From positions 124,001-188,000 of IMG/VR virus record IMGVR_UViG_3300050821_002957: a stretch of 64,000 nucleotides of DNA, one strand, 5' to 3'. The position numbers and the translations under genes were made by a program. This document shows positions 3,026-59,681 of the stretch, one piece after another; the first letter of the stretch is position 1; every line of letters begins with the position of its first letter. The notes under the pieces are model-generated. The model was not told the origin of the DNA. It ran no database searches and saw only the letters and a program-made list of their open reading frames with translations.

Positions 3026-3565
3026 TCACGATTGTTTGACAGGCGCAATCAGAGCGACAGCGAGTTTGCCATCTTGACGTGGAATCGATTCAGGCTTTCC
3101 AAATGGCTCCAGGTCGGCAATGAGACGTTTGAGAAGATCGTATCCAATGTTGGTATGAGCGATCTCTCGGCCACGGAACTGAACGACGGCTCGGACTTTG
3201 TTGCCGTCTTTCAGGAATTCAATTGCATGTTTCTTTTTGAAATCGTAATCGTGATCGTCAGTGTTTGGCCGGAACTTCAGTTCTTTGATGACGGTGACGT
3301 GTTGGTGACGCTTTGCTTCTTGTTTTTTCTTTTTCTCTTCAAACAAATACTTACCGTGGTCCATAACTTTGGCGACGGGCGGCTTGGCAGTTGGAGAAAT
3401 GCAGATGAGATCAAGGTTGAGTGCTCTGGCTCGTTGGATTGCTTGATTGGTTGGAAGGATGACGTTGGAGCCATCTGGGAAGATTGTCCGAACTTCAGGA
3501 AACCGGATACCTTCGTTTACGTTATCTTTGATTTTTGGTCGTGGGGTTCTTGGTTGATATGCCAT
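3026..3565 (-). CDS. infC: translation initiation factor IF-3
   Basis: NEGIRFPEVR, KPPVAKVMDHGKYLFE, IKELKFRPNTDDHDYDFK and FRGRE motifs. Confidence 0.97.
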   Translation of the reverse strand: MAYQPRTPRPKIKDNVNEGIRFPEVRTIFPDGSNVILPTNQAIQRARALNLDLICISPTAKPPVAKVMDHGKYLFEEKKKKQEAKRHQHVTVIKELKFRPNTDDHDYDFKKKHAIEFLKDGNKVRAVVQFRGREIAHTNIGYDLLKRLIADLEPFGKPESIPRQDGKLAVALIAPVKQS

Positions 3566-3586
3566 TAAGTGTAATTATTTAGACCT

Positions 3587-3985
3587 TTACCACTTGATTA
3601 ATAAAGTCCATTCGGTGTAGGCAGCATGAGAGTAGTCACCTTCACCACAACTGGCGGCAGTGTCCTTATATTCTGGATAGTATTTGGAAATAAGGGCCAC
3701 ATGATACCCTTCGTTTTCTAGTAGTTGTCTAGCGGCAGTAGTGACAACCCGTCCATTATCATCTTTCCACCAATCAGGAGAGACTTCTAAAGATTGAAGA
3801 CCTTTGCTGGCAGCTTCTTCAATTTTCTTGTGAATCTTTTCGACCATCTCTTTTGGATACTTGTCTTTCAAGTCCAATTGAAATTTTTTGGTTTCTTCTT
3901 CCCGCCTGATCCGGTCGGCCTCACTCTTTTCCCAGGCGAGTTGATTGGCTTTTTTGGTTGCGGCGGCAGCTTCTTTTGCAGTCAT
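3587..3985 (-). CDS. hypothetical protein
   Basis: 132-aa ORF in the gene run. Confidence 0.55.
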   Translation of the reverse strand: MTAKEAAAATKKANQLAWEKSEADRIRREEETKKFQLDLKDKYPKEMVEKIHKKIEEAASKGLQSLEVSPDWWKDDNGRVVTTAARQLLENEGYHVALISKYYPEYKDTAASCGEGDYSHAAYTEWTLLIKW

Positions 3986-4042
3986 AGTTTATAACGTGGC
4001 CGGATGCTATTAGTCACCCGGCTACGCCCACAGCGATGGATA

Positions 4043-4549
4043 TTACTCCACCAAATCGAATGCCCAGTTTGCCGCTTGAATCGACGTATCGAGCAGACGA
4101 AGTTCTTGACTCAGGTCATCGACGAGCTTGGTAAAATAGGCCAAGCTGACACCAGGAGCCACGAGCATTTTCGGAGCGTTCTCACCGTACATGCGGCGAG
4201 ACTGATTACGCCCACGAATTTGCTCTTTGATATTTGCAAAATGTTGGATCTGCGATTTCAAGGCATCACGATGAGCAAGCGCCTGCATCATGGTTCGTTC
4301 GCCGACCATCGTAGAATTGTTGGAAGTGTTGATGGAAACCGTCAGTGCTTCCCAACGATGAAATGCACTATGAAGAGAGATTAACAGTGCAGCAGCGTCT
4401 TCTCTTTCATCGTCATCGGCTACAAGACCGGGTAGCCCGAGACCAATCGTTGGTTCTTCAACTAATGCTGCTTCTGAAAAACGACGGTTCAGGTCTGTAA
4501 TACGTGCGCCCAAGGCTTTCTTTTCGAGCAATGCTTCTGCAAGTTTCAT
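4043..4549 (-). CDS. DIP1984-family coiled-coil protein
   Basis: N-terminal MKLAEALL and C-terminal LRLLDTSIQAANW signature; SD aaagga upstream. Confidence 0.8.
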   Translation of the reverse strand: MKLAEALLEKKALGARITDLNRRFSEAALVEEPTIGLGLPGLVADDDEREDAAALLISLHSAFHRWEALTVSINTSNNSTMVGERTMMQALAHRDALKSQIQHFANIKEQIRGRNQSRRMYGENAPKMLVAPGVSLAYFTKLVDDLSQELRLLDTSIQAANWAFDLVE

Positions 4550-4558
4550 AATGTCCTT

Positions 4559-4771
4559 TTAATCTCGTCCCGATCCCCAAGTGTTGTTTGGCTCGTATGA
4601 GCATTGTTCGACCGTTGCCATTGCACGAACAAAAACGATGCCACCATGTTCTACCTCTGGAAGAGAGAAATCAATATCTTTGATGTCACACTTAAGATTT
4701 TTGCGGATTAGATATTGTTTAATTGCTAATTTGATCTCTGGCTCGTCAAGAGTTACTTGGTGTGTCAACAT
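4559..4771 (-). CDS. hypothetical protein
   Basis: 70-aa ORF. Confidence 0.5.
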   Translation of the reverse strand: MLTHQVTLDEPEIKLAIKQYLIRKNLKCDIKDIDFSLPEVEHGGIVFVRAMATVEQCSYEPNNTWGSGRD

Positions 4772-4803
4772 GCTTTGATGATACTGTATTTTTGTTGAGT
4801 TGT

Positions 4804-4831
4804 AAAGGGGTGCTGCGAAAACACCCCCTTT
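4804..4831. terminator. intrinsic terminator hairpin closing the ncRNA cluster
   Basis: aaaggggtg-ctgcgaaaa-cacccccttt inverted repeat flanked by A/T runs. Confidence 0.7.
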
Positions 4832-4832
4832 T

Positions 4833-5205
4833 GATGGCCGCAGGATTCTACTGTTTCCAATCCTGCCAAAGTCAACCGCTAAACTTTCCCGGTTGGTCAG
4901 CCTACGTCTCGTGCAGGCTACGCTATTCTTTCACAGTATGTCACGATACTTGCCGAACCAATTAAGGCCGGGGAACTGACTGTCAGCTACTCGATAAAGA
5001 ATAAATTTTAGTGGAAGCATCCGACCATCTTACGATGACTTTGCTGCCCCGTCCACAAGCGGGAACGTTTTAGCCTGTTTCGATTACTCTAACAGATTAC
5101 TCTTTCGAGAGACGTTCGTGACAGACTTTTTAACCCAGGTCTGCCAGCCGGATTCTCCTCAAATGGAGTTGTCGGCGAACCGATTCCATACACTCAGGAG
5201 TCGAG
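4833..5205 (-). ncRNA. candidate large structured ncRNA (~370 nt) of unknown family
   Basis: No credible ORF; many hairpins on the minus strand (ctctc-gaaa-gag, gtcatc-gtaa-gatggt, agcctgc..gtaggct, gcaggatt..aatcctgc, gcagac..gtctgt); ends at the terminator. Confidence 0.5.
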
Positions 5206-5210
5206 AAATT

Positions 5211-5360
5211 TTTGATCCGAACAAATGGGAGCAATGGATGTTGTTAGGTGCTCTACCATTGAGCTACGTCCTCCATAATAATTTTGGGAGGACGATGGGA
5301 CTCGAACCCATAACCACCCGCTTAATAGGCGATAACCCATCACGAACGGCTCGAATCAAA
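5211..5360 (-). ncRNA. Y RNA-like (YrlA-type) permuted tRNA mimic, copy 1
   Basis: Terminal stem GAGCCG/UUUGUUC and GUUAUC motif, then T arm (AUGGG UUCGAGU CCCAU), loop-closed acceptor stem (CGUCCUCC/GGAGGACG) and D arm (GCUC AAUGGUA GAGC). Confidence 0.85.
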
Positions 5361-5366
5361 CTTGAA

Positions 5367-5496
5367 TCGTGAACAAATAAGCGCCATCCGAGGTTTAGCA
5401 TCTTAACCATTAGACGATACTAGTTTTACCCAGCAGCGGGACTCGAACCCACATCGCTCGTTTTATAGACGATAACGGACAACAAACGGCTCACGA
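5367..5496 (-). ncRNA. Y RNA-like (YrlA-type) permuted tRNA mimic, copy 2
   Basis: Same GAGCCG...GUUAUC...UUUGUUC frame; T arm GUGGG UUCGAGU CCCGC precedes the closed acceptor stem and D arm GUCU AAUGGUUA AGAU. Confidence 0.8.
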
Positions 5497-5500
5497 AAAT

Positions 5501-5677
5501 TTTGGTGCGAACAAATGGCGACAGTAGGGAATGCTCACTCTTTTCAAGTTTTGCTGAACTTCGCCCAGGCCGAGACCTTTACGAGCGGTGAGGATTCGAC
5601 CCCACTCTTTCATTACCCTTGCGGATAATGACGTTCCAAACCAATAGATAACCTACCAATCAACGGCTCACACTAAA
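5501..5677 (-). ncRNA. Y RNA-like ncRNA, copy 3 (divergent, extra helices)
   Basis: GAGCCG/GUUAUC/UUUGUUC frame; T-like arm with GUCGAAU loop; extra GCAA-capped hairpin. Confidence 0.7.
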
Positions 5678-5682
5678 CTCTT

Positions 5683-5862
5683 CTACTTGTTTTTATAATC
5701 GGTCTCGTAGAACCCCGATCCTTTGAAGTGAATCGCAACAGGCGACATCAACTTCTCCAGCTTACCACCGCACTCATGTCTGTCAAGCGGTGCATCATCC
5801 ATTCGTTGTCGAACTTCAAATATTTCTCCGCACTTTTCACAAACGTATTCGTACAGTGCCAT
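5683..5862 (-). CDS. FmdB-family zinc-ribbon protein (59 aa, absent from the ORF track)
   Basis: Manual translation MALYEYVCEKCGEIFEVRQRMDDAPLDRHECGGKLEKLMSPVAIHFKGSGFYETDYKNK*. Confidence 0.9.
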   Translation of the reverse strand: MALYEYVCEKCGEIFEVRQRMDDAPLDRHECGGKLEKLMSPVAIHFKGSGFYETDYKNK

Positions 5863-5871
5863 TCAAATTTA

Positions 5872-6026
5872 TTGTCCGAACAAATGATCGCCTAAGGAAA
5901 TTTGTGACGGTCGCTCTACCAACTGAGCTACATCCAACGTTAACGTTCGCACGCCTAGATGGAAGACAGGACTCGAACCTGCGGCCTACTGTTTGGAATG
6001 ATAACCCTAAACTACGGCTCGAACAA
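5872..6026 (-). ncRNA. Y RNA-like (YrlA-type) permuted tRNA mimic, copy 4
   Basis: GAGCCG/GUUAUC/UUUGUUC frame; T arm GCAGG UUCGAGU CCUGU followed by D arm GCUC AGUUGGUA GAGC. Confidence 0.82.
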
Positions 6027-6033
6027 AACTCTA

Positions 6034-6121
6034 TCTCCCGAAAGGATCTTCCTTCACTTCTGGCTCCATATTACCGTTCGCACGACTTTTTAGCCATCGT
6101 TCTAGCTTAAACTACAGGAGA
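6034..6121 (-). pseudogene. degenerate tRNA-like element
   Basis: Acceptor-like UCUCCUG/CGGGAGA and D-like arm; 6-nt anticodon loop, no TTC T-loop, no CCA. Confidence 0.35.
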
Positions 6122-6126
6122 AAATC

Positions 6127-6203
6127 TGGTAGTCAGTCTCGGACTCGAACCGAGGGCCTTCTCCGTGTAAAGGAGTTGCTCTAACCAACTGAGCTAACCG
6201 ACT
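6127..6203 (-). tRNA. tRNA-Val(TAC)
   Basis: Cloverleaf, anticodon loop TTTACAC, CCA encoded. Confidence 0.95.
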
Positions 6204-6208
6204 AAAAT

Positions 6209-6285
6209 TGGTAGCGGATCTAGGAGTCGAACCTAGTATCTCAAGGTTATGAGTCTTGAATGGTTGTCCGTTCCACTCACCCGCA
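6209..6285 (-). tRNA. tRNA-Met(CAT), initiator-like (1:72 mismatch)
   Basis: Loop CTCATAA, CCA end, U1/U72 mismatch. Confidence 0.85.
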
Positions 6286-6402
6286 AATCGAAACCGGAGC
6301 ATACTGCGCTCTACGGTAAACTTGTATTCCTGCCTACGTCCTCTCGCCTTCAGTCATTATGGTACGAAACCCATGCATAGATTCCGCACTGAGGATCATC
6401 AG

Positions 6403-6801
6403 TCACCGTAAAGCTCGGTTCGCATCTACGAACAACTGCAACGCTACGGAATGCCGTTTTTCCGGCAGGAAATTCTCATATGTTTCTATCCTGTGGCAAT
6501 TGGCACACAGAACTTCACATTTTGCAATCTCAGCACGTACCCTAGCTTCGCTCCAACATTTACGAACCGCATCGGCCACGTTTGCTACTTTATCACGCAA
6601 ATGATGAAAATCAAGAACTCTAAAATCCTTGATCCCACATTCTACGCATCCACTCGCCTCTTTCAAAGTTCTAACCAACAACAGAAGACGCTCTTTCGTA
6701 GCACGATTATGAATCAATGCCCTAGCTTTTAACTTGGCTTTGTTATTCAAATAATGCCGATGAGCACTCTCTTTCTGTTTGATCTTACACTTATGAGGCA
6801 T
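6403..6801 (-). CDS. HNH homing endonuclease
   Basis: CVECG...LDFHH...CEVLCANCHRIET motif; start moved to the ATG just after the tRNA CCA. Confidence 0.88.
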   Translation of the reverse strand: MPHKCKIKQKESAHRHYLNNKAKLKARALIHNRATKERLLLLVRTLKEASGCVECGIKDFRVLDFHHLRDKVANVADAVRKCWSEARVRAEIAKCEVLCANCHRIETYENFLPEKRHSVALQLFVDANRALR

Positions 6802-6803
6802 TC

Positions 6804-6880
6804 TGGTTGCGGCAGATGGCTTCGATCCATCGACTTCTTGCTTATGAGGCAAGCGTTCTACCGGGCTGAACTATACCGCA
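6804..6880 (-). tRNA. tRNA with CAT anticodon (Met or Ile2)
   Basis: Cloverleaf with cttgc-CTCATAA-gcaag anticodon arm; CCA. Confidence 0.9.
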
Positions 6881-6889
6881 AAAACTTTC

Positions 6890-6971
6890 GCAATGAACAA
6901 ATTTTTCAATGTCGGGTTTTCCTGGCATCTTAAAAGAACGCTGATAACCAACATCTTCGGCTCATCACTGC
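6890..6971 (-). ncRNA. short Y RNA-like ncRNA lacking the tRNA module (YrlB-like), copy 5
   Basis: GAUGAGCCGAA...GUUAUC...UUUGUUCAUU; begins 5 nt after a TATAGATA late-type promoter. Confidence 0.7.
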
Positions 6972-7000
6972 TTTACTATCTATACACGCAAAAATTGTGT

Positions 7001-7135
7001 AGAGCGAACAAATATGTAGGTCTCCGCTTGTAACTACCGCCCGGACGCAATCAATATTACTACTGACTGCGGTATGGAATCGAACCACATCGCCTTTTTT
7101 GCAGAAAGAGAACAGAAACCCAGGCGGCTCACTCT
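7001..7135 (-). ncRNA. Y RNA-like ncRNA, copy 6
   Basis: GUGAGCCG/UUUGUUCGC stem; T arm UGUGG UUCGAUU CCAUA; closed acceptor-like stem; TTGACA/TATTCT and CTAAATA promoters directly upstream. Confidence 0.72.
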
Positions 7136-7175
7136 GACTTATTTAGAATACCACACCCAGTCACAGTGTCAAGTA

Positions 7176-7481
7176 TTATTTTCCGAGAAAGAACAAAGAC
7201 GAATAGATGCCGGTCACCGTACCAAGAACACCACCGGCAGTATAACCGATCCATTGAATAAAAGTGTCCTCATCTTTGCCTTTCATCATTTTCTTGATCA
7301 CAAAAAATGTCAATGAGGCCAGTGTTGTATCTGTGATGATAGCCGCCAGAACGTTAGCCTGTGCGACGGCTCTCCATGAGATTGTACAAAGACCCCAATT
7401 GAAAAACTGCATGGCTCCAATTTCAAGTGCATCAATGATCTGTTTCTTGTTGACTGCTGGAAATCGGAAAATTACTTTCAT
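7176..7481 (-). CDS. small membrane protein
   Basis: Three hydrophobic segments. Confidence 0.6.
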   Translation of the reverse strand: MKVIFRFPAVNKKQIIDALEIGAMQFFNWGLCTISWRAVAQANVLAAIITDTTLASLTFFVIKKMMKGKDEDTFIQWIGYTAGGVLGTVTGIYSSLFFLGK

Positions 7482-59060: not shown

Positions 59061-59214
59061 TGATACTACAATCACTAAAACAATTTTTGGGACGCATTAT
59101 GTTTTAGTCTCCTTGGGATGTTCCCTTCGGTATTTAGTTGCTAGAATATTTCTTCCGGCATAGGAAAATTTTATAAGGTATTGACAGGATACGGGTCTTG
59201 TGCTATAAATAGAG

Positions 59215-59490
59215 TCGTAGCAGATAGTCGAAGTGAACGAAGAACGCTTCTTGGACATGGGTTCAATTCCCATCGGCTCCACCAAAATTCTGATTTTAGG
59301 CATCAGAGAACTTATGGGGCCGCCCCGGTTTCGACAGGATGAGATGTTGCGTAAGCAGGGCTACCGTGGTCCTTGTCCACGTTATCCAGAAGGAATCATA
59401 AACGCTAATGCACCTGCATTTGCTTTCGCTGCCGCTGCCTAAACAGCGCTCGAACGAAGTCGGAGAACTTTGTTAAAGAACTCCCAACAG
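59215..59490 (+). ncRNA. ssrA: two-piece (circularly permuted) tmRNA, tag ANAPAFAFAAAA
   Basis: T arm and CGGCUCCACCA (ends 59284) precede GGGGCCG...GGUUUCGAC (starts 59316); G3.U70 pair; tag ORF 59404-59442; TTGACA/TATAAA promoter upstream. Confidence 0.92.
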
Positions 59491-59521
59491 AAGGCCGGGG
59501 CAACTCGGCCTTTTGCTTTTT
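59491..59521 (+). terminator. intrinsic terminator after the tmRNA
   Basis: aaggccggg-gcaa-ctcggcctt hairpin followed by a T run. Confidence 0.85.
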
Positions 59522-59681
59522 GAAAGGTTGTGTTTATGAGACGACATTTGAAAATGGTCCATCACCACGGCAAACGAGCACTAAAGTCTAAGTACGGACA
59601 GGTGTTCATCATCCTGTGGTTCGTGCCGGAAGCCATTGCACTTTTTGGTTTGATATGGGCTGCATGGCGACACCTTGTAAA

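What the first reader, a model, noticed from the sequence alone, without database searches (positions are those of the whole stretch)
4833..5205. Unassigned ~370-nt highly structured RNA ending the ncRNA operon
This ORF-free, hairpin-dense stretch includes GNRA tetraloops and lies between the Y-like array and a terminator. Large ornate RNAs such as GOLLD and ROOL are known near phage tRNA clusters, but I cannot assign this one to a family.
Basis: partly seen in the sequence, partly recalled or inferred. Interest (0 to 1): 0.6.

Follow-up and report, generated by a model that had tools for sequence, protein, structure and literature searches.

The report
New pseudoknotted RNA in huge phages
The flagged stretch encodes a real, evolutionarily conserved folded RNA with no match in Rfam 15, which sits at the end of a tRNA and Y-RNA gene cluster in a group of giant soil phages; its function is unknown.

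Summary
Window 5210-4832 (minus strand) has no conserved ORF. It follows the last YrlA-like RNA of a 405-kb phage that also encodes Ro60/TROVE. It is not one uniform 370-nt RNA but three parts.

- **Pseudoknot module (5207-5119, about 90 nt).** It has two pseudoknots. It was found in 7 of the 11 distinct relatives whose upstream sequence is available. One 41-nt stretch is 95% identical in a phage whose neighbouring protein is only 54% identical.
- **Insert (5118-5013, about 105 nt).** It was found only in this phage and consists of hairpins capped by GAAA and GUAA loops.
- **Core (about 5001-4832, about 170 nt).** It has 5-6 helices and is present in all 13 distinct relatives that have upstream sequence.

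Base-pair covariation is strong. In the core, 21 of 26 pairs show compensatory changes and 94.7% of cells pair, against 72.5% in shuffles. Both pseudoknots are supported as well.

No Rfam 15 family matches, in the window or in relatives. Conserved patterns found no homologue in 185,579 prokaryote genomes or in IMG/VR.

Metatranscriptome contigs from two studies cover the ncRNA cluster. One of them covers 5244-5022. None covers the core.

The most likely role is a processed, trans-acting RNA that scaffolds a protein complex, made together with the tRNAs and Y RNAs. A cis-acting regulator of the downstream DUF6847/IF3 genes is a serious rival.

The parts
5191..5207 (-). Hairpin Ha of the pseudoknot module. 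Short stem with the conserved 7-nt loop GACUCCU.
   Evidence: A5 alignment, helix 1: 97% of cells paired, 2 pairs with compensatory change (CGUUC/GAACG becomes CGUUU/AAACG in L115). The stem is weaker in the window.
5155..5200 (-). Pseudoknot PKa. Loop CUCC (5200-5197) pairs with GGAG (5158-5155). In the window it encloses an inserted UUCG-capped hairpin (UCGG-UUCG-CCGA, 5183-5172).
   Evidence: 100% paired in 7 sequences. C-G changes to U-A in L107. The insert is seen only in the window, and L108 has a different insert.
5121..5152 (-). H-type pseudoknot. S1 is 5152-5148 with 5138-5134. S2 is 5144-5139 with 5126-5121. Loop 3 (GUUAAAAA) is A-rich.
   Evidence: Both stems are 100% paired. S1 G.U changes to C-G in 3 sequences. 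S2 C-G changes to U-A in L113, and a further pair changes in L115 by eye. Window 5162-5122 is 95% identical to L106, although the DUF6847 protein P0020 encoded there is only 54% identical.
5013..5118 (-). Lineage-specific insert. A three-way junction closed by GAACGU/ACGUUC (5117-5112 with 5058-5053), a GAAA loop (5106-5103) and a GUAA-capped hairpin (5037-5026).
   Evidence: No counterpart in any relative: the same linker is 11-14 nt in L106, L108, L113, L115 and L103. Its fold is not better than shuffles. A metatranscriptome contig ends at 5022, just 3' of the GUAA hairpin.
4832..5001 (-). Conserved core RNA.
- P2: 4997-4993 with 4927-4923 (an alternative 8-bp register exists).
- Pw: 4972-4953.
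- Px: 4921-4896, with loop ACGAGAC.
- Py: 4893-4875.
- Pz: 4866-4840, with loop GGAAACAGUAG.
- Invariant single strands: UUGACUUUGG (4875-4866) and GGCC (4839-4836).
   Evidence: nhmmer and CM hits in all 13 distinct relatives. RNAalifold found 3 hairpins on its own, with 15 of 20 pairs compensatory. On A4, 21 of 26 pairs are compensatory and 94.7% of cells pair, against 72.5% in shuffles and 32-51% in slid controls. P2 is moderately supported at 81.5% paired. It is a single copy in the phage genome.
4804..4830 (-). Terminator-like hairpin (AAAAGGGGGUG-UUUUC-GCAGCACCCCUUU) that ends the ncRNA unit in this phage.
   Evidence: RNAfold gives -15.8 kcal/mol. A similar hairpin with a UUU tail occurs in L008 and L011. 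It fails the strict terminator scan. In 7 other relatives it is replaced by a 9-16-bp covarying stem with the loop AUCCCC (9 bp and loop AAUCCCC in L027) and no U-tract.
4778..4806 (-). Promoter-like site for the downstream protein genes: TTTACA, 17-nt spacer, TATCAT.
   Evidence: 10 of 12 consensus matches. Both hexamers are kept in L008 while the spacer differs. This is a consensus match only.
5225..5339 (-). Context: the last YrlA-like (Y RNA-like) module, directly upstream of the target.
   Evidence: RF02553, 40 bits, E 1e-6, below the gathering score of 69. The phage encodes a TROVE/Ro60 protein (130 bits).

Best explanation
The interval encodes a structured noncoding RNA of a clade of huge soil phages that matches no Rfam 15 family. 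It is read on the minus strand as the last unit of a long tRNA / Y-RNA-like transcript.

It is modular. A double-pseudoknot module is joined to a conserved core of 5-6 helices. The junctions and loops of that core are nearly invariant while its stems covary. In this phage the joining linker is expanded by a tetraloop-capped insert.

Shown: conservation, strand, secondary structure, pseudoknots, position in the cluster, presence of part of it in RNA libraries, and absence from Rfam.

Inferred: like its tRNA and Y-RNA neighbours, it is cut out of the precursor at AU-rich linkers. It then acts in trans as a folded RNA that binds a protein or another RNA. The likeliest setting is the phage's RNA-handling programme (Ro60 with Y RNAs, tRNAs, tmRNA, IF3). 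The invariant single-stranded motifs (UUGACUUUGG, GGCC, ACGWGAC, GGAA-type loops) would be the contact surfaces.

I put about 0.95 on 'real conserved structured RNA with no Rfam 15 match' and about 0.4 on the trans-acting scaffold role.
For: Homologues lie in 13 distinct contigs upstream of DUF6847. The RNA is more conserved than the neighbouring protein gene: 84% against 74% DNA identity with L008, and a 41-mer at 95% with L106.

Covariation: core; pseudoknots. G.U pairs occur only in the minus-strand sense.

The RNA starts within about 20 nt of the 3' end of the last Y-like RNA in L024, L026 and L027. That leaves no room for its own promoter.

The gene immediately downstream is unrelated from relative to relative: HNH endonucleases and unrelated ORFs of 62-147 aa.

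In the window and in L008, a hairpin and then a conserved promoter-like site separate it from the next genes.

Metatranscriptome contigs from two studies lie on the ncRNA cluster at 100% identity. In X3 one of these covers 5244-5022. The flanking protein genes (3335-5000 and 5673-5839) have none.

The phage encodes Ro60/TROVE. There is no conserved ORF.
Against: No RNA contig covers the conserved core (4838-5004) in either metatranscriptome, although the adjacent part has k-mer depth of about 7. The core therefore seems at least several-fold less abundant than its neighbours, which fits a short-lived cis element better.

In L011, L109 and L115 the core or its hairpin abuts the DUF6847 start with no room for a promoter.

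All relatives were found through DUF6847, so independence from that gene could not be tested.

No partner protein or target has been identified. Contigs cannot show RNA ends or strand.
Confidence: 0.4

Rival explanations
1. Cis-acting leader. The core, with or without the pseudoknot module, would be a riboswitch-like, protein- or tRNA-sensing attenuator, or a put/EAR-like processive antitermination element. It would control read-through from the ncRNA transcript into the downstream DUF6847 / IF3 genes.
For: The core is upstream of DUF6847 and on the same strand in 13 of 13 loci with enough upstream sequence.

In L011 the order is hairpin, UUUAAUU, ribosome-binding site, ATG within 26 nt. In L109 helix Pz itself is followed by a U-rich tract 25 nt before the ATG. 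In L115 the hairpin abuts the gene.

Invariant junctions with covarying stems are typical of aptamers. No RNA contig lies on the core, just as none lies on the neighbouring mRNAs.
Against: The gene directly downstream is not conserved; unrelated ORFs and HNH genes are inserted in 8 lineages.

The window and L008 have a promoter-like site between the RNA and the genes, yet they keep the core at 84% identity with compensatory changes.

Most relatives have no U-tract after the 3' hairpin. No alternative antiterminator pairing that holds across relatives was found by eye.

The link to DUF6847 is biased by how the loci were found.
Confidence: 0.3
2. RNA-processing or stability element. This would be a self-cleaving ribozyme, or a nuclease-blocking fold, that defines the 3' ends of the Y-like RNAs or protects the precursor.
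For: The tandem pseudoknots sit directly 3' of the last Y-like RNA. The RNA contig ends at 5022, right after a GNRA hairpin, and the downstream part is missing.
Against: No match to any ribozyme family in Rfam, including HDV-like, hatchet, pistol and twister-sister. The pseudoknot module is absent in 4 relatives that still have Y-like RNAs and the core. No cleavage-site signature was identified. Contig ends are weak evidence for RNA ends.
Confidence: 0.1
3. Divergent member of a known family: a Y RNA / YrlA, RNase P RNA, GOLLD, ROOL, or a Csr/Rsm-type sponge.
For: By eye, relatives carry GAGCCG, which is also the 5' motif of the Y-like modules, and a T-loop-like GUUCGACUCC. Motifs resembling the RNase P CR-I and CR-V elements can be seen by eye: GAGGCAAUCC in relatives' 5' subdomain and GGAGAAUCCGGCU in the pseudoknot module. 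GGAA sits in the hairpin loops of Py and Pz.
Against: No Rfam hit at E<=10 in the window or E<=5 in relatives. The window's target has no Ro-binding terminal stem and no tRNA-like D or T arms. The P4-like strands are not complementary and appear in the wrong order. GGA is lost in L027 (Pz) and L115 (Py).
Confidence: 0.05
4. Non-functional spacer made of decayed tRNA or Y-RNA copies, or a small protein gene.
For: Single-sequence folding energy is no better than shuffles. The middle third was found in no relative.
Against: The RNA is more conserved than the adjacent coding DNA. There are 21 of 26 compensatory pairs. No open frame is kept and indels shift the frame.
Confidence: 0.03

Closest known systems
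YrlA / bacterial and phage Y RNAs (Rfam RF02553; Chen et al. 2014, PMC4201824; phage phiLo Yrl1 and Yrl2, PMC12135203)
   Same: Encoded in the same cluster and on the same strand, directly after four Y-like modules, in a phage that encodes Ro60/TROVE. Several non-identical RNAs made from one precursor are known for Ro systems (YrlA/YrlB, Yrn1/Yrn2). Relatives carry a GAGCCG motif like the Y-like 5' ends.
   Different: There is no YrlA match, no terminal Ro-binding stem and no tRNA-like module. The architecture (two pseudoknots plus a multi-helix core) is unrelated. The Ro60 gene lies about 170 kb away rather than within 2 kb.
GOLLD, ROOL and other large 'ornate' RNAs of unknown function found near tRNAs in phages (Rfam)
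   Same: ORF-free, multi-domain and pseudoknotted. Phage-borne, next to tRNA genes. Stems covary around invariant junctions. Function unknown.
   Different: No covariance-model match in the window or relatives. It is smaller: about 260 nt of conserved parts here, and up to about 330 nt from the 5' subdomain through the 3' hairpin in the fullest relatives. So far it is known only from one clade of soil huge phages.
Classic H-type pseudoknots with an A-rich loop 3 (tmRNA pseudoknots, viral frameshift and tRNA-like-structure pseudoknots); comparison from general knowledge
   Same: S1, a short loop 1, S2 and an A-rich loop 3. Tandem arrangement of two pseudoknots. The phage also carries a two-piece tmRNA.
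   Different: It is not followed by a tag reading frame or a slippery site, and it is not attached to an acceptor-like arm. No tmRNA model matches here.
Processive antitermination RNAs (HK022 put, EAR) and transcription-attenuating riboswitches; comparison from general knowledge
   Same: A structured element in a nascent transcript, just upstream of a terminator-like hairpin and protein genes. A phage setting (put).
   Different: Much larger than put. No sequence or model match to EAR. Most relatives lack a U-tract terminator. The downstream gene is variable.

Membership tests
YrlA / Y RNA (RF02553) | Covariance-model match at or near the gathering score (69 bits) | tested here: not met
   No YrlA hit inside 5205-4833 at E<=10. 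The neighbouring modules do hit, at 40 and 27.7 bits.
YrlA / Y RNA (RF02553) | Stem formed by the 5' and 3' ends that carries the Ro-binding motif. In this phage's Y-like modules this is 5' GAGCCG...GGGUUAUC with 3' CAUUUGUUCG. | tested here: not met
   Neither motif is present in the window's target. Relatives' 5' subdomain has GAGCCG but no complementary 3' strand, judged by eye.
YrlA / Y RNA (RF02553) | tRNA-like module (T arm and D arm) | tested here: not met
   ARAGORN and the Rfam tRNA model find nothing in 5205-4833. GUUCGACUCC in relatives lacks a pairing T stem.
YrlA / Y RNA (RF02553) | Binding to Ro60 | not testable with these tools
   The phage encodes TROVE/Ro60 (130 bits). Binding needs a pull-down or gel-shift assay.
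GOLLD / ROOL / HEARO / raiA / OLE (large bacterial and phage RNAs in Rfam) | Covariance-model match | tested here: not met
   No hit at gathering score in the 64-kb window. None at E<=10 on 4500-7000. None at E<=5 on seven relatives' loci.
RNase P RNA | Model match, plus the long-range P4 helix between CR-I and CR-V in the canonical order | tested here: not met
   No RNase P hit. The CR-I-like and CR-V-like strings are not complementary and are adjacent, judged by eye. The supposed catalytic part is missing in 4 relatives.
H-type RNA pseudoknot (structural class) | Two stems whose strands interleave, each supported by pairing across homologues | tested here: met
   S1 and S2, and also Ha and PKa, cross. 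99.2% of cells pair, 5 pairs have compensatory changes, and slid controls give 22-49%. Only 7 sequences were available.
Rho-independent terminator | G+C-rich stem followed by a run of at least 5 U in 8 | tested here: not met
   The stem at 4830-4804 is stable (-15.8 kcal/mol) but is followed by UUUACAAC. The scan reports no terminator in 4400-7200.
Riboswitch / cis-regulatory leader | Fixed association with the regulated downstream gene, and an expression platform with alternative pairing | tested here: inconclusive
   It is always upstream of DUF6847, but that is how the loci were found. The immediate neighbour varies. L011 and L109 look like attenuators. No conserved alternative pairing was found.
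Csr/Rsm-type sponge RNA | Multiple invariant GGA motifs in hairpin loops | tested here: not met
   GGAA sits in the Py and Pz loops in most sequences. It is lost in L115 (Py, GAGAAAG) and L027 (Pz, UAGAAG).

The most novel reading that the evidence does not exclude
This is a new class of large pseudoknotted RNA specific to huge phages that has a biochemical activity of its own. It could be the RNA subunit or tether of a phage Ro60-type RNA-surveillance particle, with an effector domain unlike any known Y RNA. Or it could be a new ligand-sensing or catalytic RNA that gates expression of the phage's translation-takeover genes (IF3 and neighbours).
Probability: 0.3. Interest if true: 0.8.

Novelty: new variant of a known kind. 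Interest (0 to 1): 0.62.

Why it matters
Huge phages carry tRNAs, tmRNA, translation factors and Ro60, but the RNAs that work with these proteins are barely charted. Here there is an RNA family with no match in Rfam 15, with a covariation-supported fold and two pseudoknots, physically embedded in a phage Y-RNA array. Its conserved single-stranded motifs make it a concrete candidate for a new RNA-protein particle, sensor or ribozyme.

The covariance model built here could be used to find and annotate the family in other huge-phage assemblies. The fold is well enough defined for probing, pull-down and cryo-EM. If the RNA proves to be tied to Ro60, it would widen the known range of Y-RNA effector modules. 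If it is a leader, it would be an orphan regulatory RNA controlling phage translation-takeover genes.

Tried and rejected
- **Rfam.** Searched at gathering score and at permissive E-values, on the window and on seven relatives' loci. Nothing hit the target.
- **Phage GenBank records (blastn).** No match.
- **IMG/VR.** The single-protein search and the alignment search with DUF6847 found only a second assembly of the same phage, plus distant DUF6847 genes that were not examined in detail; two of those loci (L016, L017) were searched with R1 and gave no hit. A Y-like pattern brought in three other phage records that lack the target. Conserved core and pseudoknot patterns found nothing new.
- **185,579 prokaryote genomes.** The core pattern gave 0 hits. 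The pseudoknot pattern gave 5, about the chance expectation by my own estimate, with no complement for stem S2 downstream; two lie in a homologous open reading frame and are chance matches by my reading.
- **Thermodynamic support.** Not significant.
- **RNase P homology.** Suggested by CR-I-like and CR-V-like strings. Rejected because there is no P4 complementarity, the order is wrong, the model gives no hit, and the 'catalytic' part is optional.
- **A helix closing the core** between GUAG-GYYG and CGGC. Rejected because C4840 is already used in Pz and only one side varies.
- **Switching between helix Pw and the 3' hairpin.** Sequence similarities were seen in L024, L106 and L108 but in inconsistent orientation, so the idea was dropped.
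- **Pairing between CAAAGUCA and the invariant UGACUUUG.** Present in the window and in the Y-like B module of L106, L107, L024 and L026, but absent from several relatives.
- **CsrA-sponge idea.** GGA is not invariant.
- **DUF6847 as a clue to function.** Only an uncharacterised structure (3kdq) and no literature.
- **Co-occurrence with Ro60 in relatives.** Their records are not held, so this could not be tested.
- **P0004 contig.** It brought no upstream sequence.

Full report
**Setting.** The window is bases 124001-188000 of a 405,631-bp IMG/VR phage record. Around the finding, all genes run on the minus strand. Read 5' to 3' on that strand, the order is:

- a tRNA-like gene (6285-6212, Rfam only) and tRNA-Val (6203-6127);
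- Y-like module A (about 6030-5880);
- a small Zn-ribbon ORF (5862-5683);
- Y-like modules B, C and D (about 5672-5215);
- the flagged stretch;
- a G+C-rich hairpin (4830-4804);
- a 70-aa ORF, a DUF6847 protein, a 132-aa ORF and IF3.

Modules D and A give sub-threshold matches to the Y RNA-like family YrlA, at 40 and 27.7 bits against a gathering score of 69. The phage encodes a TROVE/Ro60 protein about 170 kb away (130 bits). The 'Y-like array' context is therefore credible.

**The observation.** The sense strand of 5193-4833 has no ORF of 40 aa or more. The GAAA (5106-5103), GUAA (5033-5030) and UUCG (5179-5176) tetraloops exist. Single-sequence folding, however, is no better than shuffled sequence. 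The z-score is -1.2 for the whole stretch, -0.04 for the middle and -1.1 for the 3' part. The 'terminator' has only UUU after its stem and fails a standard scan. The sequence alone therefore does not prove a structured RNA. The proof comes from relatives.

**Relatives.** Phage GenBank records and IMG/VR hold only a second, identical assembly of this phage. I used the neighbouring DUF6847 protein to reach metagenome contigs.

- In the nearest relative (L007-L010; protein 73% identical), window 5005-4776 aligns at 84% DNA identity. That is higher than the 74% of the coding gene next to it.
- More distant relatives (protein 47-60% identical) share two blocks. One is a 41-mer, window 5162-5122, at up to 95% identity. 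The other is a block of about 115 nt, window 4948-4834.
- A profile search, and then a covariance model, found the 3' block in every distinct relative that has upstream sequence. That is 13 sequences at 109-184 bits, plus a 40-nt fragment in L011.
- The element is single-copy in the phage genome.

**Anatomy.** The stretch is modular.

1. *A pseudoknot module (5207-5119).* A hairpin with the conserved loop GACUCCU has its CUCC paired to a downstream GGAG. An H-type pseudoknot follows: S1 UCCGG/CUGGG, S2 GCAGAC/GUCUGU, and an A-rich loop 3. The module is present in 7 of the 11 distinct sequences whose upstream region is available. It is absent in L008, L024/L026 and L027. Five relatives (L106, L107, L103, L113, L115) carry about 50-100 nt more on its 5' side.
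2. *A 105-nt insert (5118-5013).* It is made of tetraloop-capped hairpins and has no counterpart anywhere. In relatives that have both the pseudoknot module and the core, the linker is only 11-14 nt.
3. *The core (about 5001-4832).* It has helices P2, Pw, a short Ps, Px (loop ACGWGAC), Py and Pz (loop GGAAnAGnAG). Its single strands are almost invariant: UUGACUUUGG, GGCC, GAGUAG, CAGUUC, AUCGUG and GUGAAAG.
4. *A 3' hairpin.* In the window, L008 and L011 it looks like a terminator (AAAGGGG...CCCCUUU). In seven other relatives it is a 9-16-bp stem whose sequence differs completely between relatives while its loop, AUCCCC (AAUCCCC in L027), stays constant. Those hairpins have no U-tract.

**Structure evidence.**

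- RNAalifold, run on a plain MAFFT alignment, found Px, Py and Pz on its own. 15 of the 20 pairs carry compensatory changes.
- On the model-guided alignment, 94.7% of pair cells are standard pairs, against 72.5% in shuffles (0 of 500 shuffles reach the observed value). 21 of 26 pairs have double changes. Sliding the partners by 1-3 columns drops pairing to 32-51%.
- Adding the long-range helix P2 keeps the totals significant, but P2 itself is only moderately supported (81.5% paired, 2 compensatory pairs). The window can also form an 8-bp alternative register.
- For the pseudoknot module (7 sequences), all four helices, including both crossing pairs, are 97-100% paired. Five pairs are compensatory and slid controls give 22-49%.
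- G.U pairs occur in the minus-strand sense, so the folded molecule is the minus-strand transcript.
- No reading frame is conserved, and the indels are 1-2 nt long.

**Is it a known family?** No Rfam 15 family matches at E<=10 in the window, or at E<=5 in seven relatives' loci. That includes YrlA, tRNA, tmRNA, RNase P, GOLLD, ROOL, HEARO, raiA and the small ribozymes.

- By eye, some strings recall RNase P CR-I and CR-V. They are not complementary, they come in the wrong order, and they lie in an optional module.
- The window's target also lacks the two end motifs shared by this phage's Y-like modules, and it has no tRNA-like arms.
- Conserved patterns of the core and of the pseudoknot found nothing in one genome from each of 185,579 prokaryote species, other than chance hits that I read as lying in protein-coding sequence. 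In IMG/VR they found only this phage.
- A literature search found phage Ro60 and Y RNAs, but nothing describing this RNA.

**Expression.** Two soil metatranscriptomes from different studies hold contigs identical to the cluster.

- In X3 these lie at 5022-5244, 5234-5658, 5873-6247, 6255-6461 and 6774-6993, at k-mer depth 6-15. Nothing lies on the protein genes at 3335-5000 or on the Zn-ribbon ORF.
- This pattern fits stable processed ncRNAs rather than DNA carry-over.
- One contig covers the pseudoknot module and the insert and stops at 5022, just after the GUAA hairpin. No contig covers the core.
- Contigs cannot show ends, strand or level, and a gap proves nothing. Even so, the core is probably several-fold less abundant than its neighbours in that sample.

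**Mechanism.** Two readings remain.

*For a trans-acting RNA that is the last unit of the ncRNA precursor:*
- The core begins within about 20 nt of the end of the last Y-like RNA in L024, L026 and L027, so it has no promoter of its own.
- The gene just downstream differs between relatives: HNH endonucleases of two kinds and unrelated ORFs of 62-147 aa. That is what one expects at a boundary between transcription units.
- In the window and L008, a hairpin is followed by a promoter-like TTTACA-17-TATCAT. Its hexamers are conserved while the spacer is not. The core is nevertheless under clear selection there.

*For a cis-acting leader (riboswitch-like attenuator or antitermination element):*
- The core is always upstream of DUF6847.
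- In L011, L109 and L115 it, or its hairpin, abuts the start codon.
- It is not seen in the RNA contigs.
- The first of these points is weakened because every locus was found through DUF6847.

I favour the trans-acting RNA scaffold at about 0.4. I put the cis regulator at about 0.3, a processing or ribozyme role at about 0.1, and a hidden member of a known family or junk at under 0.1 together. The remainder is unassigned.

**Verdict.** This is a real, conserved, pseudoknotted RNA family that matches nothing in Rfam 15. It is so far confined to one clade of huge soil phages and sits in their tRNA / Y-RNA cluster. The size and unity of the element need correcting: it consists of a conserved module of about 90 nt and a conserved core of about 170 nt, split in this phage by a private 105-nt insert. 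Function remains inferred.

Noticed in passing
G000:C1:297054-298073 (minus), outside the window; locus L119: The phage encodes a TROVE/Ro60 protein (PF05731, 130 bits, open frame of 622 aa). It lies about 170 kb from the Y-like RNA array. Known bacterial and phage Y RNAs lie within about 2 kb of the Ro gene.
   Followed up: partly
window 6030-5215 (minus): There are four Y-like modules. Each starts with GAGCCG...GGUUATC (GTTATC in module C) and ends with ATTTGTTC (G or A next). Their middle parts differ: three are tRNA-like and one is larger. Only two of them give weak YrlA hits. This looks like a diversified Y-RNA array.
   Followed up: partly
window 5862-5683 (minus): A 59-aa Zn_ribbon_8 ORF sits inside the Y-like array. 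It is kept at the same place in many relatives (L008, L009, L103, L104, L107, L115). No RNA contig covers it, although both flanks are covered.
   Followed up: no
window 5017-5049: A 33-nt piece of the insert (GGGGCAGCAAAGTCATCGTAAGATGGTCGGATG, read on the minus strand) matches a contig of a different sequence at 31 of 33 positions in metatranscriptome X4 (depth 11.4). X3 shows the same loose ends at this place. The flanks of that contig include a tRNA-like GCCCCTGTAGCTCAGAGT. A related module therefore probably exists in another expressed RNA.
   Followed up: no
window 5043-5036 and 4874-4867 (minus): CAAAGUCA in the insert is a perfect complement of the core's invariant UGACUUUG. In L106, L107, L024 and L026 a CAAAGUC lies in a hairpin loop of the large Y-like module B. 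Other relatives lack it, so an RNA-RNA contact is possible but not general.
   Followed up: partly
window 59192-59533 (plus): A permuted (two-piece) tmRNA (RF04321, 93.5 bits). ARAGORN gives the tag ANAPAFAFAAAA. It lies next to two tRNA-Thr genes.
   Followed up: no
window 6285-6212 (minus): A tRNA-like gene with a CAU anticodon loop. The Rfam tRNA model finds it (39.6 bits) but ARAGORN does not. It is 92% conserved in L008.
   Followed up: no
window 6461-6286 and 6993-6881 (minus): Metatranscriptome contigs extend over stretches upstream of the tRNA-like gene and of tRNA-Met that overlap only mechanical, unconfirmed ORFs. There may be further ncRNAs or stable leaders there.
   Followed up: no
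L106 3603-4001, L024 1002-1394, L025 467-688: In several relatives, free-standing HNH endonuclease genes of two kinds are inserted between the RNA and DUF6847. In L106 the ATG is 11 nt after the 3' hairpin. This site is a hotspot for mobile genes.
   Followed up: partly
window 4549-3026 (minus): A DUF6847 (DIP1984-family) protein and a full-length IF3 (IF3_N plus IF3_C) are syntenic across this phage clade. The only solved DUF6847 structure (3kdq) is uncharacterised.
   Followed up: partly
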